The translations under genes and the position numbers were made by a program. A DNA stretch of 33,575 nucleotides from Octopus bimaculoides (Eukaryota). The notes beneath the pieces are model-generated. The model was not told the origin of the DNA, ran no database searches, and saw only the letters and a program-made list of their open reading frames with translations. Each line of letters starts with the position of its first letter. The stretch's first letter is position 1. The stretch is taken from the NCBI RefSeq assembly GCF_001194135.2, contig NC_068999.1:15209552-15243126 (forward strand), in the 5' to 3' direction. Of the stretch, positions 100 to 23,808 are shown piece by piece.

Positions 100-1300
100 G
101 TCAGACCCACCTTTGCTGATTTTAACTGGGCAGTAATTAGACCGCATACTAAAACTATGACTTCCGGAAAGTCTGGGCTCTGGAGACTTATGTGGACTCT
201 CACTTTATAGAAGTACGTTAAAAGTAATGTTATCGCGTTACTCAGCGGCAAAACCTTCGACACTAAGTACCATACAAAACTCCTATCGAAATTACTCGCC
301 TTTGCCCTCATTGCTTCCCTACTATCTTGAATCGATAGCTTCTCTGCTTCATCGCTCCATCATGATATATGCGGGTGGGTTCATTTTGTCTCACTGTTGT
401 AAGTCAACTCTGACGTACCTCATGTTTTGAGATTTTCCTCCATTTACTTTCTTCTCAACATCTGCGACCTATCAGGCGTCACGTTCAACGACAACCACGA
501 GGGAATTGTCATTCTTACTTAAAATTCCTGAACAGCGAACCACACCTTTTCGCAAAATCGATACCACTCACCAAATCTTCACAGGTTTCGTAAACGGAAA
601 CATAGAAGGCATACTCAAGTAAGGCTATTCTTAAATATTTTTACAGTATTACTCATATAAATTAAAATTCATCAGAACGTGCACTCCGCATTTAACTGCT
701 ACACAGCCTTCACGATAACTCTAAATAATACCACGTACTCGCACCGACAACAGTGCCTGTGGAAATCTTATGCTTTACAACACCCAAGATTGAAATTTAG
801 GTTTAGATCTATAAAAATATTATAGCTGCTAAAAAGTGTACGAAGGTCAAGTAAAACCCACGGAAGCTTTTCTCTTTCTACATCTACGTCGATGCTGCTT
901 ATACACAATCAGACATGCTGGGCTGTGTCCAAAGTGACGTGAATCAACTCTTTGGCGTTATATTATATCAGTCACAGACACACTACACCGATATCGTCCC
1001 CACTCTTCATTCTTTCTGTCACTACCATAATGGTCGTATTATTGACAATTCTTCTGTCACTACCATAATGGTCGTATTATTGATAATTCTTCTGTCACTA
1101 CCATAATGGTCGTATTATTGACAATTCTTCTGTCACTTATAGAAGAGCACTGCTGAAACACATGGGCTTTCAGTTTCACATTTCCTTTGTGGTACCCAAC
1201 ACCCAGGCAACATAATAACAATTATACCCTGTCTTTCCGTCCTTGAATATTGATTCTCTGTAATTTCCTCTTTGCCCTTGTCTTTCGGTAAGTGTGTGGC
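100..1300 (+). mobile_element. Decayed non-LTR retrotransposon (CR1/L2/Jockey-type LINE): reverse transcriptase to 3' end
   Basis: Hand translation gives RT-like motifs in the expected order despite stops and frameshifts: NYDFRK..GDL (about 153-190, cf. QYGFRxxRSTGDL), VIALLSGKTFDTKYHTKLLSKL (229-294, cf. IALDISKAFDxVWHxxLLxKL), VNSDVPHVLRFSSIYFLLNICDL (403-471, cf. [23 protein letters not shown]), YEGQVKP (about 839, cf. YKxxVRP), LGCVQ (918, cf. LERVQ), SFCHYHNGR (1011, cf. SLFYRYYNGR). Confidence 0.7.
1014..1137. repeat. 38-bp tandem repeat, about 3.3 copies, inside the LINE relic
   Basis: Unit ttctgtcactaccataatggtcgtattattgacaattc starts at 1014, 1052, 1090 and 1128 (partial). One c/t difference in copy 2. 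Confidence 0.95.
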
Positions 1301-4560: not shown

Positions 4561-4712
4561 CTTTCAAATTTTTCACGGGAAACGTTTAGAAAACCCAAAT
4601 AAAGCTCATATTTCATTGTACCGGCCATAGGCTAATGGTGCTGACAGCTAAACAAGTTTTTGGAGGCTGCATCGAATCGTACCGATATAGTACAGGATTA
4701 ATATAATAATAA

Positions 4713-5163
4713 TAACAATAATCCTTGAATGGAATTTATGAACATTTGATGCTTCGCTGCTCGCGTTTCCTCAAGTCGCGTGTCTCTTAAGATCAGAGTC
4801 CGTTTCTGGGAACATTAATGCGTAGTCCGTAGTATTCCTGCGACTCGGGTTGATCATATTCATGGATTTATTTCTTTAGGCGATATAAAGTTAATGGATT
4901 ATAACAGAGATGATTATCTCTATTGTTCAACATGAAGTTTCAGTGGTCAAAAGGGATAAGCATCCCCCTGTTGTACATCCATTAATGTTATATCACCTGA
5001 AGAAATGAATCCATGATTATGATCGACTCGATGCCTAGGGATACTATGGATTGCATTGTAATCATCTAAGGAACGGGGCCTGTAATTTTGAGAGACATGA
5101 GAATTGTGGAAACGCGCGTAGCGATGCATTAAATGTTTATAATCTCCATCCAAAGATTATTGT

Positions 5164-5165
<2 letters not shown>
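4713..5165. repeat. Imperfect palindrome / fold-back: arms about 4713-4924 and 4949-5165, 24-nt loop
   Basis: Left taacaataatccttgaatggaatttatgaacatttgatgcttcgctgctcgcgtttcc matches the reverse complement of the right end, taacaataatctttggatggagattataaacatttaatgcatcgctacgcgcgtttcc. Similarity continues to the centre (tgattatctctatt vs tgcttatccctttt). About 75-80% identity by eye. Confidence 0.9.
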
Positions 5166-5197
<32 letters not shown>

Positions 5198-6060: not shown

Positions 6061-6561
6061 CTGAACAACAGGTGGTAGCTTATTAAGTGGATCGTATTTA
6101 AATGAAATGGAAAATATGCACTTATATTTCTATCAAACTCAACAATTTCGCTGAAGCTGAGATATTTTCTGATAATAGATATGGTTTAGCTCCTTGACTA
6201 CATCACAGCTTCACTAACTCCGACTCTCCTTCGCATTTAACAAATATAAAATGACAGTATTTCTTTTATCTATTTTTCGGCAATGGAGTTGTTATTGAGA
6301 AATTGCAAAGAAGATGTTCCAGAGTGATGGATTTCTAATCAATCAGAATACCTATAAATGTGTGTGCATTCATAGACGATATTCATACAGGCTGCAGTAA
6401 AACCCAAATAGAAAATCCGAAACTAATACTAGCACGATTATATAGAATATTCTAGCAATATCAATCGCAAACTCAGGCCAAAAAGGAGGCAGCGTGTTCT
6501 TAATGTTTGATCACGTTAAATAAATTAGATTGAACATAGCAGAGCACCTAGACATCAATTA

Positions 6562-7854
6562 TCAAGACATCCCATAAGTTCTGCCTGATTCTACCTTTTT
6601 TTTTTTTCAATTGAATGAAATTTATTTGTATTTTAGAATGTCTAATGGAATTTTAAATTATTTTTATGCATTTGTGTACATTTAATCTAATTCAATATTA
6701 TTTTACAAAATAATAGAATTAATGCTTCTTTGTTTAAAACCCTTTCTAACATGGAAGTATCCAAAGAGCGTTTCAGGCACATAATGCTTTATGAGTACAA
6801 AAAAGGAAACTCTGTAGTCGAAACTATTCTAAACATACACCTAGTTTATGGGAAAGAATGCTTGAAAGAACTTGCAGAAGATGGTTTGCAAAATTCAGAA
6901 GTTGAGATTTCAGTCTTGAAGATCAAGATCGAACAGGACGTCCAGTTGAGTTTGATGATAAGCTCCTTGAGGCATAACTTGAAGAAAATCATGCATTGTC
7001 AATTGAAGAATTGGCATGACAGCTTAGTTCAAACCATGCAACTGTTCATCGGCATCTTCAGCAACTTGCAAAGATTCCTAAACTTGGAAAATGTGTGCCT
7101 CATGTATTGTCCGAAAGCAATCGCAAATCCTGAGTTGACATCTGCTCTCTTCTCTATATTCTCGTGAACTCATTTCACCCTTTTTGGATAGACTTGTGAC
7201 TGGTGGCGAAAAATGGATCTTCTATCAAAATGTTAAACGTCGTAAACAGAGGCTTGGTAAAAATGAAAAAAAAATCAACCACAACCGAGAAGGGAACTTC
7301 ATGGGGAAAACGTTCTTCTCTGTATCTGGGGTAGGATTGCAAAGGAATAATTCACTTTGAATTGTTACCACCTAATGCAACAATCTATACTCAAGTCTAC
7401 TGTCAGCAATTAGAGCGTTTGAATCAAGCTTTGAAGAAAAACGACCCGCTTTAGTGAATCGAAAAGGAGTGATGTTTCATCAGAATAATGTGTGACCCCA
7501 CACTGCAAAGATCACATCACAGAAGATCCAAGAGCTTGGTTGGGAAAAATTCCTCATCCACCTTATTCTTCCGAAGTTGCTCTTTCAGACTACTATTTGT
7601 TTCGTATTCTACAGAATCATTTGGGGGACATAACTTTCGCAAGCCAGCAGGAGGTCGAAACTGAAATTTCCGAGTTCTTCGCTTTAAAACCAAAAGAGTT
7701 TTACATTGATGTGATTAAAATGCTTGTAAATAAATGGAAGGAAATCATAGATAATCAGGGCAAGTACATTGATGATTAAATTTCAATTAAATAGAACATT
7801 TGATCACGTGTTTTGTTTATTCAAATTTCGAACAGAACTTATGGGATGACCTGA
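6562..7854 (+). mobile_element. Full-length non-functional mariner (DD34D) DNA transposon, 1293 bp
   Basis: 22-bp TIRs: tcaagacatcccataagttctg (6562-6583) and the reverse complement of 7833-7854, tcaggtcatcccataagttctg (2 mismatches). TA target duplication at 6560-6561 and 7855-7856. The length is typical of mariners. Confidence 0.95.
6751..7779 (+). pseudogene. Mariner transposase pseudogene (mellifera-subfamily-like)
   Basis: ATG at 6751, MEVSKERFRHIMLYEYKKGN. After frameshifts: WFAKFRS*DFSLED, CVPHVL (WVPHEL motif), RLVTGGEKW (first D to G), HQNNV*PH (second D to N), HPPYSSEVALSDY (YSPDLAPSDY motif), ending GKYIDD* at 7779. Several stops and frameshifts. Confidence 0.93.
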
Positions 7855-8831
7855 TAGATTGCCTTGATTTTTATATATATATAGTACGCATTAACGAGGT
7901 AACATATTCCGAAAATAATGATCTGGTACGCTACTATGTTTTCTGCAGATGTTGGGCTGGTAATGTGGCACGTTAAAAATAGCAGCTCTGGAGTATAAAT
8001 AACACATGGCGATTCACTGCATTCGATTGTTAATGCAACCCAAATGACTGGGACGCACCAGAAGAGGCTAAACGAAGAAAAAACATGAAGAAATTATATC
8101 ATGCGATAAACGAACACTAATGAATGCGATGCAAATACAAAAAAAAAAGGTTGTAGTATAAAAGAATAAAAAATGCCTGTTAAATATCAAACTAATGAAA
8201 ATGAAGGAGATATGTTAAGAAGCCTATGTGGACAGCCGGCATATGTGACAACTAAGAAATTTTATCTCAACGTGTAGTGTAGAAAGACAAAGTAACCATT
8301 AATGATAAAACTAAACAAGCGGTGAGAGATTTAATTCCATTCCTGCCAATACTGAATTATTTCATTATTGTCATTAATAAGGAGATTACGCGCTTCTAGA
8401 ACATTTCCTTACAGCACTCAAATCGTCCTAACGGTGTTATTGATGGAATGTCCATGTAGATTTGAATAAACAATCGCATTTTGAGGTATAAAAGAAAAAA
8501 AACCTTTGGCAATACCTCGAAAACACGGTATGCATTTAAACGACATAAATTCATCACTGTAATATTGAAAATACTCTGTAACGTAAGCATGGAGTAGGCA
8601 CATAAACGAAATAGCTAGAAGGCTAGAAACTAAAAAAAAAAAAGAAATGTGTGAGGAAAGTGGGTATGATGGAATACTGTGTGCAATAGAAGAGCAATAT
8701 TTCTCATGTATATTTACTGTATTCTACCTGAGGAGTAATGAAACGAAGCAGAAAAATACATCCGACAGTGATTTATGAAGTGGAAAGGAAAGTAAATGCA
8801 TTTCATCATTGAATATATATATATATATATA

Positions 8832-9371: not shown

Positions 9372-9656
9372 AATTAATAATATCAGGGTAACAAAACTTT
9401 TAGAAATGTTTACTAGCAGTGGCCTAGCGTGTAGAAAACTTAGTCAAAAGACTATATATTATTCATATAAATACAGTGTACATTTAAACACATAAAAGGT
9501 ATCCCTCATAGAATTCATGGCTCGCTAGAAGGAACAGCCAAAACCCAATGTACACTGTATTTATATGAATAATGTATAGTCTATTGACTAATTTTTCTAC
9601 ACGCTAGGCCACTGGTAGTAAATTTCTAAATTTTTATGACATTGATATTATTAATT
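9372..9656. repeat. Inverted repeat (MITE-like or fold-back): arms 9372-9484 and 9547-9656, 62-nt loop
   Basis: Hand alignment gives about 12 differences in 113 nt (about 89%). Includes the block cagtggcctagcgtgtagaaaa and 28 identical nt next to the loop. Confidence 0.95.
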
Positions 9657-10727: not shown

Positions 10728-10754
10728 CTCTTAGTCTACGCCACATCATTCTTA

Positions 10755-10988
10755 TTTCTTTATTGCCCACAAGAGGCCAAGCATAGAGGGGACAAACAAG
10801 GACAGACAAAGGGATTAAGTCGATTACATCAACCCGAGTGCGTAGCTGCTACTTAATTTACCGACCCCGAAAGGATGAAATGCAAAGTCGTCCTCGGCGG
10901 AATTTGAACTCAGAATGTAACGCCAGCCGATATACTGCTAAGCATTTCGCTCGGCCCACTAACGATTCGGCCAGCTCGCCGCCTTCTC
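10755..10988 (-). mobile_element. tRNA-headed SINE (type A, young subfamily), full length with 16-bp TSD
   Basis: Minus head aaggcggcgagctggccgaatcgttag, B-box gagttcaaattcc, tail aataaagaaataag. TSD cgccacatcattctta at 10739-10754 and 10989-11004. Closely matches 19073-19303. Confidence 0.92.
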
Positions 10989-11009
10989 CGCCACATCATT
11001 CTTAGACGC

Positions 11010-12030
11010 TGACCCAACTCAGGGGCAAATCCCTCTCGGACATACTTCATGCGGATCATGTCACGTGATTTTGATCTTATCTAATCGTCCTCAGTAATGG
11101 ATACTCGCCTGCTAGACATAGCGTTAGTCTGCCATCTATTTTGCTTGTAAGTAAAGTTTTTGAATGTATTTTCGCAAATTCCTTATATTTTGGAATCATG
11201 AAAATTATTTGAACCCAAAAACGTGTCTGAACGGATTTTGTTTCTTTGTATGTAAACTGTCAGCAACCTCTTAGCCAGTTGCACAACTGATATCTCCTAA
11301 AATCACAATCTCGTTGTTTCTAGATTTTCAAACATGAGCTCTTCAATTAGTATGTAATATTGAAATATAATTGGGATGTTCGTAGAAGTTGTGGTTTTAT
11401 CAATGTATTGTGGGCAGGCCGGGAGCAATAATTCTCTTATTCAAGTAGTCCCTTTTATTTTAGATCGAAGCAGAAATTTTCCGGTATGTCTGCATTTCAC
11501 AAAGATTTTTGATGTATCATTTAAAACTTATTTATACTTGCTAATTTGGGGATTACAGTCTTATAGCGGATTAGGAAGAGTTATTTTTTCTGTTTATGTA
11601 AGATTTTCTAGAATATTCCTGAGAAGGTCAAATTTCATTTTGTTGTTTATTAAATCTTCCAGCAATGATGGATCGATTATGTTTACTATAACATTAAATT
11701 CCTTACTAAATCCCGATAAAGTTTTAACCATTTTTTTTACAAGGTTTTGCAGTTTGGAGATTATTTTGTTCTCATATGGGATTGCATCAGCGTTAGCAGC
11801 AGAGACTAAATGGGTATATATCTTTATTCCTAAAATAACTATGTTACCTGTTCGTTCAACGCCATTTGTTCTTATACTTACGTCGTCAATATATTTTTTA
11901 GACGACAATGGATTATTTTGTTGTACAAATGCATTATGTTATTTATGTCGCTTCGCGTCCAAATTCCGCCAATCTAAACGTATCATACATCGTTGGTAAT
12001 AATGTGCCCTTCAAGGTCTGGAGACGACGG
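11010..12030 (-). mobile_element. Penelope-like retroelement fragment (RT palm/thumb, linker, GIY-YIG, 3' terminus)
   Basis: ORF 11594-11908 has KKYIDDVSI (YxDD), ADAIPYENKIISK (cf. LPFLDILIKK) and DPSLLEDLINNKMKFDLLR (cf. YPxxLIEDGIxKAxxIDxxxLR). Downstream are KIFVKCRHTGKFLLRSK (cf. KxxKSKRQPxNLKxxLxRAK), CSRP (cf. CGRP), a C..F-YI..ET GIY-YIG-like motif and a hammerhead-like motif at the end. Confidence 0.65.
11054..11098 (-). ncRNA. Degenerate minimal hammerhead-like motif
   Basis: Minus strand: atta - ctgagga - c - gat / tagataag / atc - aaaa (GAAA with G to A) - near-palindrome atcacgtgac - a - tgat. Two core substitutions, so probably inactive. Confidence 0.35.
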
Positions 12031-16607: not shown

Positions 16608-16662
<55 letters not shown>

Positions 16663-16720
16663 GCATGCATGTATGTATCTATGTGTGTGTATGCGCGCGC
16701 GTGCATGCATGCAATCATGC
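16360..16720. repeat. (TC)n/(TA)n/(TATG)n microsatellites around a 212-N gap (16396-16607)
   Basis: Directly visible. Confidence 0.95.
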
Positions 16721-16959
16721 ATACATCCCATCTATATTACTTGTCAGAAATTGATGTCATTTCTTTTATACTTGCAATCGAGTAATACATTATAAAATGA
16801 TTTATTTGCCACTGTATTCTTTACAAATGATGACGGCTGAATTTAGATTTTAATATAATATATCACTTCCTGTGTGTCAAACATCTTCATACATCCAAAT
16901 CTTTGGAATAATATAGGAAAATGTCTAACCGGATTTTCTTCTATTTGCTTATTTTCCTA

Positions 16960-17400
16960 TTATCCTTGATAATATTCAGGTCAATCATTACCTTTAAGAC
17001 GATAGCGTGTGTGTTTTGATGTTGTGATCATCTCTAAACGTTTGATACCATCTTGGAGTAAAAAAAAAATAATTCACTTCTCGTTCTCGTCCATGTGCTG
17101 ATAACATCCTATTTTCGTGTATATATCACATCTCGTTCTAAATAGGCTGGGTATATATCTAAAGGCCCGGTTCTTGGCTGGAGATTAAGAATTTCTTCCA
17201 CACAAAATTATTTAGTGTTCATTATCTTCGGCATCTTAAAACGAATCAATTTTTAGCATCCAGACAAATAATAGGGAAAAAATCCAGTCGTTGATTGTAG
17301 GATGAAAAAACAATTCTTTGTTAGCAATTCAGATATGAACAAGGCCCATCAATTTCCCTTAAATATTCATTGACATAAATTTTCTTCGCTCGAAACTGCG
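16960..17400 (-). mobile_element. Possible decayed Tc1/mariner-superfamily transposase C-terminal relic
   Basis: Minus strand, weak motifs in order: KIYVNEYL (cf. KINAxxYL), an SSPDLNPLDY-like stretch (tccagccaagaaccgggcctttagatatatac), LERDV, KRLEMI (cf. RLEAVI). Confidence 0.3.
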
Positions 17401-19072
17401 ACGAGCTCAATATAAAATGTTTAAACTGCAAAAACTTTGTTTTGTCAGTGAGCAGGTCGCTGTTTCCAGCATGAAATATTTTGATATTATATTAAAAATA
17501 TATGTGTAAGTGAAGTTAACGGCCTTCGTGCGTTTCCAGATTGTTAACTTATGTCTTCTTCGCTGCAATCGATTTTTCTTCGATACGTGATCTGAGAGCA
17601 AAACACTTGTTATGCATGTACATCTGCCTAATATTATCATCATTCCTCACTATTGCATCTCGAACATTCTAGCAGTTATACGAAGGAGACATATGTCTCT
17701 GCAAATGTATCAATCAATTTTGTCTCATGTGAATTGTAGTATGTTGATGCCTACCATACTCTTCCAAAATTCACTCTATTTCCAAATATGGACAGGAACG
17801 GTGGCGAATAATTCTAGAAAGATTGGCTGTTCTTGAAATTTGTCTGTCGCCAAATTAGCATCACGCTATCACGAAATCCATCAAACACAACACGAAAGAT
17901 TTTCCTTGATAATTTCCTATCAAGATAATATAAGCCAACGTACGCTGCAAAAGCAACAAGAATAATAAAAGCGATAGTAAAAGCAGCATAAATGAAATCT
18001 ATAAACATAATGAACAAGAAACACTTAGGTTACACTGATTGCTGCTTAAGAGTTAACAAAATGCTTATCATATAACAGGGAGACAAACTATAACATTCGT
18101 AACAGAGTCAGCATAAACGCAAAATGTTCTTGCTCTCAACGACATGTTTGGTGGATACCAGAAACATAAATATAGCTGTTCACATGTTCTGCAATCGATG
18201 CCTGATTTGCTTTTAAGAACACATTTTATACGTGAAAAAAGTTGGTTAGAGTGATCCTGATTTCTCAAGATAAGGAACCCATTAATAATTCTAACATTCT
18301 TCTTTTTGTCTGTGCTCCTATATCAACTGGTACTGAGCTGACGTTAAATCAAGCTATGACAGCTCATCGTTGATTTAATTAAACTGTCTGAGAAAAAGAA
18401 TTCAGAAATACTTGGACCCTATAATAAGCTTTCTTAATAAATGTGAGCAGTAAAAAATAAGTCCAGTACATTTACTTAGGCCACTATAGTTTTGACACGT
18501 TTAAACCCAAAGATGCATGCCCCTATCATTTCTTATATGCCAAAACATGAAATGGCACTTCATGGGAAGATCAAAGACATCATTTGCATTTTAACCTTGT
18601 CAGAATTTCCTGACATTTAAAAACCTTTTATCAAATAGAACAAGCCATAATGAATCCGTTTATAATACAGAATATTTGCTTGTTTACAATAATGTCAGTC
18701 TACCGTGAAAGACGTTTCTCAAGGGCAAAATGGAAGTGATTATACGCAGAGATTAAAAAAGGCTGCAAATTCCTCAAATATAAGAACAAATACAGAAGAG
18801 CAAAACTATAATGGTGTTGAACACAGATTTTCTCGTTCAAGCCTGACCTGGTCTAAACAACGACGAAAACAAAACAACAGCAACAAGGACAAAAAAAGAC
18901 ACCAACACCAACAAGTACAACAGCTGCAACATTAGCGACTACACCCACACTTTCCTTCTGCTTTAGTCGCGAATGAAACTAATAGTTATGGCTAAACGGT
19001 TTTAGATTCGCTCATATGGACTGTCATCAGATATTCAACAACGATTGTATGTAATTATTGATTTAATCGTGA

Positions 19073-19303
19073 AGGCAGTAAGCTGGCAGAATCGTTAGCA
19101 TGGCGGGCGAATTGCTTAGCAGTATTTCGTCTGCCGTTACTTAATGAGTTCACATTCCGCCGAGGTCGACTCAGCCTTTCATCCTTTCGGGGTCGATGAA
19201 TTAAGTACCAGTTACACACTGGGGTCGATGTAATCAACTTAATCCCATTGTCTGTCCTTGTTTGTCCTCTCTATGTTTAGCCCTCTGTGGGCAATAAAGA
19301 AAT
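19073..19303 (+). mobile_element. SINE type A, young subfamily, full length
   Basis: Head aaggcagtaagctggcagaatcgttagc to tail ggcaataaagaaat. Closely similar to the reverse complement of 10755-10988. Confidence 0.9.
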
Positions 19304-19305
19304 GA

Positions 19306-19439
19306 GGATCGTTAGCATGCCGGGCGTAACGCTTAGTGGTATATCTTCCGTGGCTACGTACTGAGTTCGAGTTCCACCGAGGTCGACTTTACCTTTCATC
19401 CTTTCGGTGACGATAAATTAAGTACTAGTCGAGTACTGA
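19306..19439 (+). mobile_element. SINE type A, older truncated copy
   Basis: gatcgttagcatgccgggcg...ctgagttcgagttccaccgaggtcgactttacctttcatcctttcgg... Confidence 0.85.
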
Positions 19440-19548
19440 ATGAAAAACAAATTTGACCTCTGCTTCATTTTGAACTCAGAGTGAAAAACTAGATGGAACA
19501 CCGCTTTGTAATTTTCCGACGCCCTAACGATTCTGCTAGCGCTCTACA
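19440..19548 (-). mobile_element. SINE type A head, older copy, inverted
   Basis: Minus strand: gcgctagcagaatcgttagggcgtcgg...ctctgagttcaaaatgaagcagaggtcaaatttgtttttcat. Confidence 0.8.
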
Positions 19549-21552
19549 TCGGACGACTAAAATGATAAAGACGTATAAACGTTATTGAATATCTTAAGAC
19601 AGCCCTATATGAGCGAATCTTCAAACAAAATCGTTGAAGACATAACCATTAGAGTTTCATTCACGATTAAACCTGAAACAAAGTGTGGTTGCTGTTGTTG
19701 TCTTTTTTATGTTGTGCTTGTGGTTCTTGTTGCTGGTATTGTTGTTTTCGTAGTTGTTTAGACCCACGTCAGGCTTGAACGAGAAAACCTATGTCCAACT
19801 CCATTACAGCCTTCTCTTCCGTATTTGTTTTTATATTTGAGGGATTTGCAGCCTTTTTTCATGTATGCGTAAAATTGCTTCCGCTTTGCCCTTGACAAAA
19901 GTCTTTGATTGCAAATTGACATTAATGAAAGCAAAGAAATATTTTGTATTAGAAATGGATGCATTGTGGTTTGTTCTGTTTAACAAAAGGTTTTTTGGAA
20001 TTTGAGGAGATCCTGGCAACGTTAAGATCTGAATGAAGCCTTTGATTTTCCCGTGAATGTCCTCTGTACAATATTTCAAGAAATAAAGTGCCATATTATG
20101 TTTTGCCATATTATCTATGATAGGAGCATATTTGAGTCTGAACGTGTCAAACGTGCAGTGGCCTAGGCAAATGATCTGGACTTAATTTTTACTGCCCCCA
20201 TTTAGTACGAAAACTGATTATAGGCTGAATTGGTATTTTAATTTGTTCTAAGACTTGTTCAATAAAAACACCAAAGATTTGTCGTAGTTTCTTCTAACGT
20301 CAGCAGCAGCACCAGTGCGTGTAGGGGTAAATATCTATTAAATGAATCCTTATCTCCAAAAATGTTGAACTCTCTAACCAACCTACATATTCGTATAACT
20401 TAAACCTTTCTGTTGTTAACAGCAAATCATAGATCGACAATATTATGATTATTTTTATTTTTGCTTGACCGCTGAGTATGTAGGCTGCTACATTTAGGCT
20501 TCCAAACGAGTCTCCCGGAGGGCAAGAATATTTCGTGTTTATGGTGATTCCGTTACGAATGGTATATTTTGGCTCCGTGTTATATGCTATGCATTTTACT
20601 ATCTCGTAAGCATCCAATAGTCTATCCTATCTAACTGTTTCTTGATCTTGATGTTGATATATTTCGTCTATTCTTTTATTTCAATCGCTTTTATTATTCT
20701 AGTTGTTGTTACCTGATATCTTGACTTATATTCTATTGATAAGAATTTATCATGGAAATCTCTTCTTGTGTTTGATGGATTTTGTAATACAAGAACGCAC
20801 GTAAGTAGATGACCGTTTGCTAACAGGCAAATTTCAAGAACATCTTATATTCCAGCTGATTTTTGAAAATGCAGCTAACCATTCTTGCCGAGAATATGCC
20901 TTCTATGGATTTGGAAATAGACGTATGATAAACATCGACACACTGCAATTTATATGAGATATAATTGATTGGCTTAATTGCAGAGATATGTCCCCTGTAT
21001 ATAATTGTGAACAGTATCTACGAAGTGTTCTAAAATGTGTTTTGAAAAACCATGCAAATTATATCCTGAGTAGTAACGTCACACCTGAATAAAAATGCCG
21101 TCATTGTCATAATTTTTATGGCGTTCGCTAAATATATCTGACTGATTTTGGTTAAAATATACGTTTTTCGGTATCGACATTCAGTTTAAGAGCCAGCTTT
21201 CATAGATTACCAAGCAAGTTTCTTTTCAAATGCTCATCAGCATTTTATCCATCTTTACATTCTCAATCGAAAATACTATCAAGATATGTATGTGAACATA
21301 CATATACATCATGTCCTCTCATTCTGTACAAACGCACTCACGGACAGAAACACACACACACGCACACGTGCATTCTCTCTTGCGCGCGCTCACTCATGTA
21401 TAAATACGCACACAACGTCTTTAAGTATATATTGTATTCTACGTCCAAGAGTGTAATAATATTGTCAGACAGGCAGACAGTCACACAGAATGTCAGATAG
21501 ATAGCCAGACAGATTGAAAATCTCTCTTAATAGGGTTAACTCTATATAACAT

Positions 21553-21778
21553 AGAAGCGCTTCCAAATTTTGTCACACGGCCAGCAATTCGGGGGGTGGA
21601 GTGTTTGAAGTCGATTACATCGACCCCGGTGCTCAATGGATTCGTATTTCATCGTCCAGGAAAGGATTAATTGAATGGTCAACCTCAATGGTATTTTCTA
21701 TTGAGAACGTAAAGTTGCATAAAATGATGATGAGCATTTAATTATGCGTGCTTACGATTCAGCCAGCTCCCCGCTTTC
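21553..21778 (-). mobile_element. SINE type A, diverged copy with an alternative 3' part
   Basis: Contains aagtcgattacatcgacccc (shared with the other type A copies) and head gcggggagctggctgaatcgtaagc on the minus strand. Confidence 0.75.
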
Positions 21779-22200
21779 TATGTAACACAGTATTATCTTT
21801 ATATGACAAAGCTTCCATTGAAATGTTAGCCTTATGAAAATTGTTTCCTGTTTTCTGTATTTCGATATGCCGTGATACATATTATATTCATCATATATGT
21901 GATCAGTTGTCATACTGTTCATTTTATTATCTTTTAGCTATGGTCCGAGCAATACATAAATTTCTTCTGTATTGTCAATTTTACGTCGAATATAATGCTG
22001 TAAAATGTCGGTATTACACATCACGTTGATTTTTCATTCAATTTTTTCACTTCACTTTGTATGCTAAACTTTAATAGGCAACCGAGTTACATGACTGAAC
22101 ACACAAATTTCATTCATACGTACTACAAATTTGTCTCACCTTTTATGCAATTTTTTGAGAACTTGACAAGAACAACCCATCAATATTGTTTTACATGATA

Positions 22201-22420
22201 GAGCGGCGATATGGCAGAATCATTAGCAAGCCGGGCAAAATGCCCAGCAGTATTTCGTCCATCCTCATGCTCTGGATTCAAACCAAGCCGAGTTGATTGA
22301 AAGCATTGCCTTCAATGCTTTATGATCGACAAAATAAATAACGGTTGAATCCTGGGGTCGAAGTAATCGACTTACCACCTTCCTTGAACTTGCTGCTAGC
22401 GCGCCAAAACTTTAATTGAA
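22201..22420 (+). mobile_element. SINE type A, diverged copy
   Basis: gcggcgatatggcagaatcattagcaagccgggcaaaatgc...ctggggtcgaagtaatcgactt. Confidence 0.8.
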
Positions 22421-22454
22421 TATACCATTTTATATTATATGTTATTACTCCCTC

Positions 22455-22839
22455 GAGGAGGCGCAATAGCCCATTGGTTAGGGCAGCGGACTCGCCGTCA
22501 TACTATCGTAGTTTCGATTCCCAGACCGGGCGTTGTGAGCGTTTATTGAGCGAAAACACCTAAAGCTCCCCGATGATCCGGCAGGGGATGGTGGCGAACC
22601 CTGCTGTACTCTTTCACCACTACTTTCTCTCACTCTTACTTCCTGTTTCTGTTGTGCCTCTAATTCAAAGGGTCAGCCTTGTCACACTGTGTCACACTGA
22701 ATATCCCGGAGAACTACATTAAGGGTACACGTGTCTATGGAGTGCTCAGCCACGTGTACGTTAATTTCACGAACAGGCTGTTCCATTGATCACATCAGCT
22801 GCAACCCTCGATGTCGTAAGCGACGGACTGCCAATAATA
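22455..22839 (+). mobile_element. tRNA-headed SINE (type B), full length with 8-bp TSD
   Basis: A-box tagcccattggttag, B-box gtttcgattccc (22511-22522), short (AAT)n tail. TSD actccctc at 22447-22454 and 22840-22847. Confidence 0.85.
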
Positions 22840-23299
22840 ACTCCCTCTAAATCTCTAAACTCCTATCATTTTATCGCTAGTATTATATTTTGTGCCGATT
22901 GGTTTTCTCGATGTTTTGTCAAGATATAATTGCTTGACCTAAACGTAAATAAATAAAAAAACACGATGACATTTTCGGAGAGCTACTTACGATACGTGTG
23001 ACATTGTTTAATAATATCAGTTTCAATTCCACAGTGTCAACATCGTTCGTTGCACGTGGAGTATTTACATGCATCTATATCTCGTTTATACCTCAGCTAT
23101 TCTCTTCCTCTGTCGCAACAGCATACTCTTCAAACAGGTAATCAATAACTGTTATATTATCTCAAGACTAAGTGTTTTGGTTAGCTCTATTGCGGTCATT
23201 TAATTCCTCTGCAGCAAAACAGATCTGCATGACCGGTTACTGATATACACACGTTTTTGGGGGTTTTTTTTCTCGTTTTTCTTTTTTTCTGGAGACCTA

Positions 23300-23660
23300 T
23301 TGAGTTAGAGGCCAGTGACATCTATGAATGTATATTTACGTTCATCAGTCAACACGTATTGCGAAGGTTTCCGTCCAGCTCTCATTATATTATCTGATTT
23401 GCTTACAATTCTGTTGTTACTCGTGTGCAACAGAGGATACAATTTCAAACCTACATAAGTAAATTTAGCACTCTTTATGAAGTATCGGAACGATAGTCCA
23501 TTTCCTCGAAATATTTCCAGATAAGAAGATATCCATTTAACATTTTACACCAATGTAGGGATATCTATGCTGCAGAAGATACATCGTTCTCATAGATTTC
23601 CACTTGAGGCTTTCAGTGATGTGTTCTTCAGGAAGACATAAGGTTTTCACGGGTTGATAA
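23300..23660 (-). mobile_element. Possible CR1-like LINE relic (region upstream of RT core)
   Basis: Minus strand SGNISRKWTIVPILHK resembles SGxxPxxWKxAxVVPIxKK. Otherwise very decayed. Confidence 0.25.
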
Positions 23661-23768
23661 TTTCTAATCTGTCTCTGGAGTTAGATACGAAGTCCAGACG
23701 TTGCTGTAAACGTTTTGTCGTGTTGTGCGTTTGTGCGGTTTCACATACACGGACAAGCGCGCGCAATT

Positions 23769-23770
<2 letters not shown>

Positions 23771-23808
<38 letters not shown>

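What the first reader, a model, noticed from the sequence alone, without database searches (positions are those of the whole stretch)
17670..21010. Ancient 3.3-kb palindrome that turns around inside a SINE with a 40-nt loop
Seen: about 1.5-kb arms are colinear and inverted at 70-75% identity, including the flank-to-SINE junction (attcaacaacgattgtat...gcagaatcgttag vs attcaataacgtttatac...gcagaatcgttag). Removing the younger SINE at 19073-19303 makes the arms meet at gaggtcgactttacctttcat (19379-19399) / atgaaaaacaaatttgacctc (19440-19460) around a 40-nt loop. Established: near-spacerless long palindromes are unstable and are the signature of hairpin-capped breaks or replication template switches. 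Inference: an old fold-back duplication seeded in a SINE and stabilised by divergence and a later insertion at its centre. Alternatively it is an undescribed long-TIR foldback element. The arm sequence matches nothing I recognise.
Basis: partly seen in the sequence, partly recalled or inferred. Interest (0 to 1): 0.8.

Follow-up and report, generated by a model that had tools for sequence, protein, structure and literature searches.

The report
Old inverted duplication centred on SINEs
A 3.3-kb stretch of non-coding octopus-type DNA is an old, decayed inverted duplication that turns around inside a cluster of three SINE pieces; it is an ordinary relic of DNA breakage or replication error, not a nearly spacerless palindrome or a new kind of element.

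Summary
The inverted repeat is real. Left 17677-19132 aligns to the reverse complement of 21001-19491 (1598 columns, 79% identity without gaps, 68% with gaps, blastn E=8e-160). Its outer ends are sharp, and divergence is even along the arms (K2P 0.24, 55 indels, non-coding). Both arms reach a SINE head at the same nucleotide.

Positions 19069-19553 hold three SINE pieces: A (full, +), B (SINE positions about 17-165, +, in tandem with A) and C (positions 1-125, inverted). Deleting 19073-19303 removes about one period of the A+B tandem, so B falls into register automatically. B matches C at only 63%, A matches C at 73%, and the arms match at 79%. The spacer is therefore 246-485 bp of SINE, not 40 nt.

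C is far more decayed than A, so the two may be independent, oppositely oriented SINEs whose pairing primed a fold-back.

The copy-number and ortholog tests could not be run, because no cephalopod genome is searchable here beyond one 20-kb Octopus vulgaris locus. A dispersed-repeat or foldback-transposon origin is therefore not excluded. No TSD or subrepeats were found. Interest is low.

The parts
17677..19068 (+). Left arm, non-SINE part (1392 nt). It is non-coding and includes an A/C-rich low-complexity tract at about 18856-18945.
   Evidence: Aligned to the reverse complement of 19554-21001. Over 1309 aligned sites: p=0.206, K2P 0.241, 130 transitions, 139 transversions. No Pfam hit for its ORFs. 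Only 11 of the 55 indel lengths listed are multiples of 3 (my count).
19069..19303 (+). SINE A, full length (235 nt). Its head abuts the left arm. No target-site duplication is visible.
   Evidence: 84.5% identical over 233 nt to the full SINE at 10754-10988(-), which has a perfect 15-bp TSD. 84.7% identical to a SINE in Octopus vulgaris locus L006.
19304..19439 (+). SINE B, a partial copy (SINE positions about 17-165) in direct tandem after A's tail. It is cut off at the junction with C.
   Evidence: Direct repeat 19088-19212 / 19305-19429, 79% identical, spacing 217 (D1). 74.5% identical to A and 63% to C.
19440..19553 (-). SINE C, an inverted partial copy (SINE positions 1 to about 125). 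Its head abuts the right arm at the same nucleotide (within 2 nt) as A's head abuts the left arm. It is heavily decayed.
   Evidence: Alignments. About 26 private changes against about 6 for A in about 100 sites. The quartet A,X10|C,Y22 is favoured in 1825 of 2000 bootstraps.
19554..21001 (-). Right arm, non-SINE part (1448 nt), the inverted counterpart of 17677-19068.
   Evidence: Base composition equals that of the left arm (A 0.37, T 0.28, C 0.18-0.19, G 0.16-0.17).

Best explanation
This is a single, old, local inverted duplication of about 1.4 kb of non-coding DNA. The copy was laid down head-to-head next to the original, and the turnaround lies in a cluster of SINE sequence. It has since decayed neutrally. 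It has no evident function today. If transcribed it would fold into a long imperfect RNA hairpin.

Shown: the arms, their sharp outer ends, their even divergence, their non-coding nature, the identical flank-to-SINE-head junction on both sides, and a centre made only of SINE pieces A, B and C.

Inferred mechanism (my favoured sub-variant, about 0.35 on its own). Before the event the locus already carried oppositely oriented SINEs (A/B pointing right, C pointing left). After a break or stalled fork, a resected 3' strand folded back and the two SINEs annealed. The non-homologous 3' tail was clipped at the end of SINE homology (SINE nucleotide 1). DNA synthesis then copied the partner's upstream flank for about 1.4 kb, and the end was rejoined to the chromosome. 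This reproduces the same flank/SINE junction on both sides without A and C being duplicates of each other. It also leaves a SINE-made spacer from the start.

Simpler sub-variant (about 0.25): one SINE was already in the segment and was duplicated with it, and A/B/C reflect later tandem duplication, insertion, deletion or gene conversion at the centre.
For: The inverted repeat is far beyond chance (E=8e-160; alignment). Identity is even along the arms, 0.72-0.87 per 100 columns, as expected for one event. There is no homology beyond 17677/21001.

The SINE is an independent mobile unit. A full copy with a perfect 15-bp TSD lies in unrelated flanks at 10754-10988, and copies occur in Octopus vulgaris. 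Yet both arms meet a SINE head at the same nucleotide.

No other arm copy is present in the rest of the 33.5-kb window or in 20 kb of O. vulgaris. No tandem repeats were reported in the arms. No TSD was found.

For the two-SINE fold-back variant: by hand count against an X-type consensus built from the alignment, A is about 9%, B about 18% and C about 29% diverged. One search gives about 26 private changes in C against about 6 in A. A groups with X10 and C with Y22 in 91% of bootstraps. A has no TSD. Other inverted SINE pairs lie within 500 bp next door (21228-21279 / 21688-21739, I7).

Published precedent: human fold-back duplications always carry a spacer, and 3 of 21 junctions lie in oppositely oriented Alu/L1 pairs (PMC3907307).
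Against: Genome-wide copy number and orthologous loci could not be examined, so 'only two copies' is unproven. The SINE comparisons rest on about 100 sites and two or three reference copies. A vs C at 73% is also compatible with what arm-age duplicates of this GC content would show (about 75%, my estimate from the base-specific mismatch rates). The quartet support is 91%, with informative sites only 6:3:1. The direct abutment of B (cut at about position 165) with C (cut at about position 125) is not explained by the fold-back itself and needs a prior or later deletion. Classical fold-back after a break predicts an arm running to the chromosome end; a 1.4-kb arm needs an early second switch or end joining.
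Confidence: 0.6

Rival explanations
1. The arms are two copies of a dispersed repeat family. Either two independent insertions happen to lie head-to-head, or this is one non-autonomous long-TIR 'foldback' DNA transposon (Galileo/FB-like) whose 1.4-kb TIRs include a SINE head.
For: Both ends of each arm fall at homologous positions, with sharp outer termini TATAC(A/G).GG.GACATAT, as expected for element termini. The window also holds two smaller hairpin-like elements, at 4701-5177 and 9372-9656, so foldback-like repeats exist in this genome. Galileo two-TIR copies reach 1.2-kb TIRs (PMC3573991). Copy number could not be tested.
Against: No TSD was found. The best candidates are 4/7 for a 7-bp TSD (my reading of the flanks), 7/10 at an offset that leaves 6 unmatched nt, and the trivial palindromic TATA. 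No tandem repeats were reported in the arms. There is no transposase or any Pfam domain. No further copy exists in 53 kb of octopus DNA. Two independent insertions would need a SINE head at exactly the same nucleotide of both copies. The SINE moves on its own with its own TSD.
Confidence: 0.2
2. A fold-back inside one SINE gave a near-spacerless palindrome with a 40-nt loop (B/C). It was later stabilised by insertion of a younger SINE (A) at 19073-19303.
For: A is the least diverged piece, at about 9% from consensus against 18% for B and 29% for C (my count). A has no TSD, which is compatible with insertion plus a 16-nt target deletion. B and C are inverted SINE parts 40 nt apart. B and C do not differ significantly in private changes (my count 17 vs 28).
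Against: The left flank-to-head junction that matches the right arm is A's own junction. Removing A leaves B starting at SINE position about 17 with no head. B vs C is 63%, the lowest of all C comparisons and well below the arms' 79%. B and C share only one derived site. The apparent 'meeting' of the arms follows automatically from A and B being a 217-nt-period tandem. The model requires A to have landed within 2 nt of the old SINE's 5' boundary.
Confidence: 0.12
3. Assembly artefact: a contig mis-join inside SINE sequence placed two paralogous segments head-to-head.
For: The window is a gap-rich draft with 8 N runs. The join lies in repeated SINE sequence.
Against: The whole structure lies in one ungapped stretch, 16608-23808. 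A, B and C differ from each other by 25-37%, so they are distinguishable in reads. The arms are 21% diverged, so this is not a collapsed or duplicated haplotype.
Confidence: 0.04
4. A selected hairpin-RNA locus, such as an endo-siRNA/hpRNA gene or a dedicated ADAR substrate.
For: The predicted RNA fold of 17677-21001 has an MFE of -1319.5 kcal/mol, with 1052 of 1238 pairs joining arm to arm. Block-shuffled controls give -746 to -759. Octopus has an unusually high load of dsRNA-forming loci and of hyper-editing (PMC5625713).
Against: The arms decay at an even, neutral-looking rate, with 55 indels and ts/tv of about 0.94. The longest perfect match is 20 nt. There is no sign of compensatory maintenance or arm homogenisation. 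No Rfam family matches. There are no expression data.
Confidence: 0.03

Closest known systems
Fold-back inverted duplications with a spacer, some primed by oppositely oriented Alu/L1 pairs (Hermetz et al. 2014, PMC3907307); replication template-switch models such as ODIRA (PMC4689423, PMC10766183)
   Same: Two inverted copies separated by a short single-copy spacer. The inverted junction lies in oppositely oriented interspersed repeats. No TSD.
   Different: The arm here is only 1.4 kb with a defined outer end, whereas the human cases have arms from about 10 kb to 42 Mb running to a terminal deletion (Table 1). The event is ancient (K2P 0.24) and fixed in a cephalopod-type genome. The mechanism is inferred, not observed.
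Foldback / long-TIR DNA transposons (Drosophila FB, Galileo of the P superfamily; PMC3573991)
   Same: Kilobase-scale terminal inverted repeats with a short middle. Non-autonomous two-TIR copies of 1.7-2.2 kb exist for Galileo.
   Different: No 7-bp TSD, no internal tandem subrepeats, no known transposase relative and no second copy seen. The inner 'TIR' ends are SINE heads.
Inverted SINE/repeat pairs as dsRNA and ADAR hyper-editing substrates (Porath et al. 2017, PMC5625713)
   Same: Neighbouring inverted repeats that would pair in a transcript. Octopus is reported as exceptionally rich in such loci.
   Different: Most of the pairing here comes from 1.4 kb of duplicated non-SINE sequence, not from two short repeat copies. 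At 79% identity it is far from 'nearly perfect'.
Octopus SINE family (copies in Octopus vulgaris assembly GCA_951406725.2, locus L006)
   Same: Central pieces A and B, and the copy at 10754-10988, are 82-85% identical to O. vulgaris copies. A tail-to-internal-position tandem arrangement also occurs there: one full unit plus four units starting at position about 53.
   Different: Here there are only two units, joined at position about 17, and they are 25% diverged. A formal family name and tRNA origin were not verified with tools (ARAGORN and Rfam were negative).

Membership tests
Local fold-back / inverted segmental duplication | Two adjacent, colinear, inverted copies of one genomic segment | tested here: met
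   17677-19132 vs 21001-19491, 79% identity over ungapped columns, E=8e-160.
Local fold-back / inverted segmental duplication | The duplicated unit is ordinary composite genomic sequence (it includes a junction with an independently mobile element), not a self-contained element | tested here: met
   Both arms run into a SINE head at the same nucleotide. The SINE transposes on its own with a 15-bp TSD.
Local fold-back / inverted segmental duplication | A single event: even divergence along the arms | tested here: met
   Identity of 0.72-0.87 per 100 columns across the whole arm.
Local fold-back / inverted segmental duplication | Only two copies in the genome, with a single-arm state at the orthologous locus of an outgroup | not testable with these tools
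   No cephalopod genome is searchable here. Arm and SINE ORF searches were empty. The metagenome and prokaryote scans were empty or gave only 20-22-nt chance matches. Only 33.5 kb plus 20 kb (L006) were checked, with no extra copy.
Local fold-back / inverted segmental duplication | Inverted homology or microhomology at the spacer/inverted-copy boundary | tested here: met
   The inner ends are oppositely oriented SINE sequences (A/B vs C). Base-level microhomology at 19439/19440 is not interpretable at this divergence.
Foldback / long-TIR DNA transposon (FB, Galileo-like) | Long terminal inverted repeats | tested here: met
   Arms of 1.39-1.45 kb.
Foldback / long-TIR DNA transposon (FB, Galileo-like) | Target-site duplication flanking the element | tested here: not met
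   Scan of k=3-15 with boundary offsets of up to 6 nt. Best results are 7/10 at an offset leaving 6 unmatched nt, and the trivial TATA; for 7 bp, TAGCAGT vs TAATTGT match at 4/7 (my reading). All are at chance level, although erosion at 21% divergence weakens the test.
Foldback / long-TIR DNA transposon (FB, Galileo-like) | Internal tandem subrepeats in the TIRs | tested here: not met
   TRF reports nothing between 17677 and 21001.
Foldback / long-TIR DNA transposon (FB, Galileo-like) | Multiple dispersed copies, with autonomous relatives encoding a transposase | not testable with these tools
   No genome to search. The arm ORFs have no Pfam hit.
SINE (central pieces A, B, C) | Short dispersed copies bounded by target-site duplications | tested here: met
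   The 235-nt copy at 10754-10988(-) has the perfect 15-bp TSD AAGAATGATGTGGCG. Other copies lie at 21560-21775 and 22197-22400, and in O. vulgaris L006.
SINE (central pieces A, B, C) | tRNA-related, Pol III-type 5' head | tested here: inconclusive
   ARAGORN finds no tRNA and Rfam has no tRNA hit even at E<=5. A B-box-like GAGTTCAAATTCC is visible by eye only; the tRNA origin comes from my recollection of octopus SINEs.
hpRNA / hairpin small-RNA locus | Long near-perfect dsRNA stem | tested here: not met
   79% identity with 55 indels. The longest perfect run is 20 nt, or 39 nt with G:U pairs.
hpRNA / hairpin small-RNA locus | Transcription and derived small RNAs or editing clusters | not testable with these tools
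   No expression data are available.

The most novel reading that the evidence does not exclude
The locus, together with the two smaller hairpin-like repeats in the same 33 kb, could reflect a recurrent octopus-specific process. This would be either SINE-primed fold-back duplication or a so far undescribed long-TIR foldback element family. Such a process would mass-produce kilobase hairpins and feed the unusually large dsRNA/ADAR substrate pool of cephalopods.
Probability: 0.08. Interest if true: 0.5.

Novelty: new member of a known kind. Interest (0 to 1): 0.2.

Why it matters
The main value is as a worked example. It shows that interspersed repeats lying in opposite orientation can seed small inverted duplications in a cephalopod genome, and that such structures persist once they have a spacer and have diverged. 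If genome-wide counts showed many such SINE-centred hairpins, they would help explain why octopus has so many dsRNA-forming loci (PMC5625713). As a single decayed locus with no coding or conserved RNA signal, it is ordinary.

Tried and rejected
1. Genome-wide copy number of the arm. A protein-level search with a 116-aa arm ORF found nothing, and a 71-aa SINE ORF also found nothing. An arm 23-mer in metagenome contigs gave 0 hits. A SINE 20-mer in metagenome and prokaryote genome collections gave only 20-22-nt chance matches.
2. An exact look-up of a window ORF (11376-11999) found nothing on record.
3. The last protein search, with the mariner ORF, returned one Octopus vulgaris protein. Its 20-kb locus L006 confirmed the SINE and mariner as octopus repeats but contains no arm copy.
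4. Coding potential of the arms: no Pfam hits; only 11 of the 55 indel lengths are multiples of 3 (my count). Rejected.
5. Known RNA families or tRNA: none.
6. Homology beyond the outer ends: none. An apparent 'gaacattc...tag' similarity that I saw by eye is at chance level.
7. TSD search: nothing above chance.
8. A third copy of the arm upstream of the SINE at 22197: only the SINE itself aligns. A 25-40-nt upstream resemblance (D3) did not extend.
9. A chimeric C (part B-derived, part A-derived): there is no positional pattern in the informative sites.
10. A literature search for the SINE sequence strings gave 0 papers.
11. One shuffle-control script did not return. It was replaced by block shuffles.
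Full report
CONTEXT. The window is draft eukaryotic sequence with 8 N runs and many microsatellites. It carries a mariner-type transposase remnant (HTH_48, E=3.8e-8) and several copies of a 235-nt SINE. The only protein homologue found for the mariner ORF is an Octopus vulgaris protein. The 20-kb O. vulgaris locus around it (L006) carries the same mariner at 86-88% identity and the same SINE at 82-85%. The window therefore comes from an octopus or a close relative. The finding lies in one ungapped stretch, 16608-23808.

THE OBSERVATION. The inverted repeat is real. A self-blastn gives 19524-20789 vs 19098-17867 at E=8e-160. A gapped local alignment joins 17677-19132 to the reverse complement of 21001-19491: 1598 columns, 1085 matches, 79% identity over ungapped columns and 68% over all columns. 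Outside 17677 and 21001 there is no further inverted similarity, and 227 of 300 shuffles score as high, so the outer ends are sharp. Over the 1309 aligned non-SINE sites, p=0.206 and K2P=0.241, with 130 transitions, 139 transversions and 55 indel events. Identity per 100 columns stays between 0.72 and 0.87. G/C sites differ more (25-31%) than A/T sites (16-17%). Base composition is the same in both arms. Only 11 of the 55 indel lengths are multiples of 3 (my count), and no arm ORF has a Pfam hit. There are no tandem subrepeats and no Rfam or tRNA hits. The pattern is that of one old event followed by neutral decay.

THE CENTRE. Positions 19069-19553 are entirely SINE-derived. The SINE boundaries are fixed by the copy at 10754-10988(-), which is flanked by a perfect 15-bp target-site duplication, AAGAATGATGTGGCG.
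- Piece A (19069-19303, +) is full length.
- Piece B (19304-19439, +) follows A's tail directly and covers SINE positions about 17-165. A and B form a tandem with 217-nt spacing (D1).
- Piece C (19440-19553, inverted) covers positions 1 to about 125.
Flank homology between the arms runs right up to the SINE heads of A and C, within 2 nt.

Deleting 19073-19303 (231 nt) from a 217-nt-period tandem necessarily slides B into A's register, so the 'arms meeting around a 40-nt loop' follows automatically from the tandem. In optimised global alignments over SINE positions 17-125, B vs C is 63%, A vs C is 73%, C vs unrelated copies is 68-70%, and A vs X10 (the copy at 10754-10988) is 82%. B/C therefore does not continue the 79% arms. 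The spacer is 485 bp between non-SINE arm ends, or about 246 bp if A positions 1-125 are taken as C's partner.

AN UNRESOLVED ASYMMETRY. A and C sit at the same junction but do not look like same-age duplicates. Against a consensus built from A, X10, B and the O. vulgaris copy V1 (alignment, counted by hand), A has about 9% private changes, B about 18% and C about 29%. In one search, C has about 26 unique states against about 6 for A in 103 sites. In a quartet test with Y22 (the SINE copy at 22197-22400), A groups with X10 and C with Y22 in 1825 of 2000 bootstraps, against 156 for A with C (informative sites 6:3:1). This is suggestive, not decisive. A vs C at 73% is also close to the roughly 75% I estimate for arm-age duplicates of this GC content from the base-specific rates.

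MECHANISM. I conclude that this is a local inverted duplication whose turnaround lies in SINE sequence (confidence 0.6). The reading that best absorbs the asymmetry is a fold-back primed by two pre-existing, independently inserted, oppositely oriented SINEs. A resected 3' strand folds back and the SINEs anneal. The non-homologous tail is clipped where SINE homology ends (nucleotide 1). Synthesis then copies the partner's upstream flank. This yields the same flank/SINE junction on both sides, a SINE-made spacer from the outset, no TSD around A, and a C that can be older and of another lineage.

There is precedent in human fold-back duplications. All 21 sequenced junctions had a spacer (766 bp-70 kb), and three lay in oppositely oriented Alu or L1 pairs of 82-95% identity (PMC3907307). 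Inverted SINE pairs within 500 bp exist right beside this locus (21228-21279 / 21688-21739, I7). The simpler variant, in which one resident SINE was duplicated with the arm and the centre was later remodelled, remains possible. The abutment of B (cut at about position 165) and C (cut at about position 125) needs an extra deletion under either variant. The short 1.4-kb arm requires an early second switch or end joining. These steps are inferred.

RIVALS.
(a) Dispersed repeat or long-TIR foldback transposon (0.2). The sharp homologous termini and two smaller hairpin-like elements in the window (4701-5177 and 9372-9656) keep this alive, and Galileo shows that 1.2-kb TIRs exist (PMC3573991). Against it, there is no TSD above chance, no subrepeats, no transposase and no further copy in 53 kb, and the inner ends are heads of a SINE that moves on its own.
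See THE CENTRE above.
(c) Assembly mis-join (0.04). This is unlikely because A, B and C differ by 25-37% and the stretch is ungapped.
(d) A selected hairpin-RNA gene (0.03). The RNA would fold (MFE -1319.5 kcal/mol, 1052 of 1238 pairs arm-to-arm; block-shuffled controls -746 to -759). However, the arms decay evenly with many indels, and the longest perfect run is 20 nt.

WHAT COULD NOT BE DONE. They need a cephalopod genome, and none is searchable with these tools. The single O. vulgaris locus obtained contains no arm copy, but it is far too small a sample to bound copy number.

VERDICT. Octopus genomes are already known to be unusually rich in dsRNA-forming inverted repeats (PMC5625713), so this is a new member of a known kind. 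Interest is 0.2.

Noticed in passing
window 4701-5177: A hairpin-like inverted repeat of about 480 bp (arms 4701-4899 / 4977-5177, 72-78% complementary, 77-nt spacer). It ends in a (TA)n run and an N gap. It is possibly a MITE or foldback-like element.
   Followed up: partly
window 9372-9656: A 285-bp hairpin element. The inner arms 9409-9484 / 9547-9622 are 95% complementary around a 62-nt spacer, and the outer 29 nt are 83% complementary. Its terminus ATATCAGGGTAAC weakly resembles the big repeat's terminus TATACAGGGGAC.
   Followed up: partly
window 6557-7859: A mariner-type DNA transposon remnant. ORF 6730-7167 has a Mos1 HTH_48 domain (E=3.8e-8). The element is 86-88% identical to two copies in Octopus vulgaris locus L006 (9925-11079 and 18010-18799).
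   Followed up: partly
L006 14889-15810 (Octopus vulgaris OX597837.1): The same SINE forms a tandem array: one full unit followed by four units that each start at SINE position about 53 (period about 173). Tail-to-internal-position SINE tandems like A+B therefore recur in octopus genomes.
   Followed up: partly
window 10739-11003: A full 235-nt SINE on the minus strand (10754-10988), flanked by a perfect 15-bp target-site duplication AAGAATGATGTGGCG and followed by a (TC)n run.
   Followed up: yes
window 21228-22400: A SINE cluster just right of the repeat: a 52-nt fragment (21228-21279, +), a full copy with a different 3' tail (about 21560-21775, -) and another copy (22197-22400, +). The first two form an 88% inverted pair 408 nt apart.
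   Followed up: partly
window 1009-1137: A 38-nt unit repeated 3.4 times at 96% identity (ATTCTTCTGTCACTACCATAATGGTCGTATTATTGACA).
   Followed up: no
window 18856-18945 and 19688-19758: An A/C-rich (CAA/ACA-like) low-complexity tract present in both arms about 120 nt before the SINE head. It could be a decayed microsatellite or the tail of an older retroposon that makes up the outer part of the arm.
   Followed up: no
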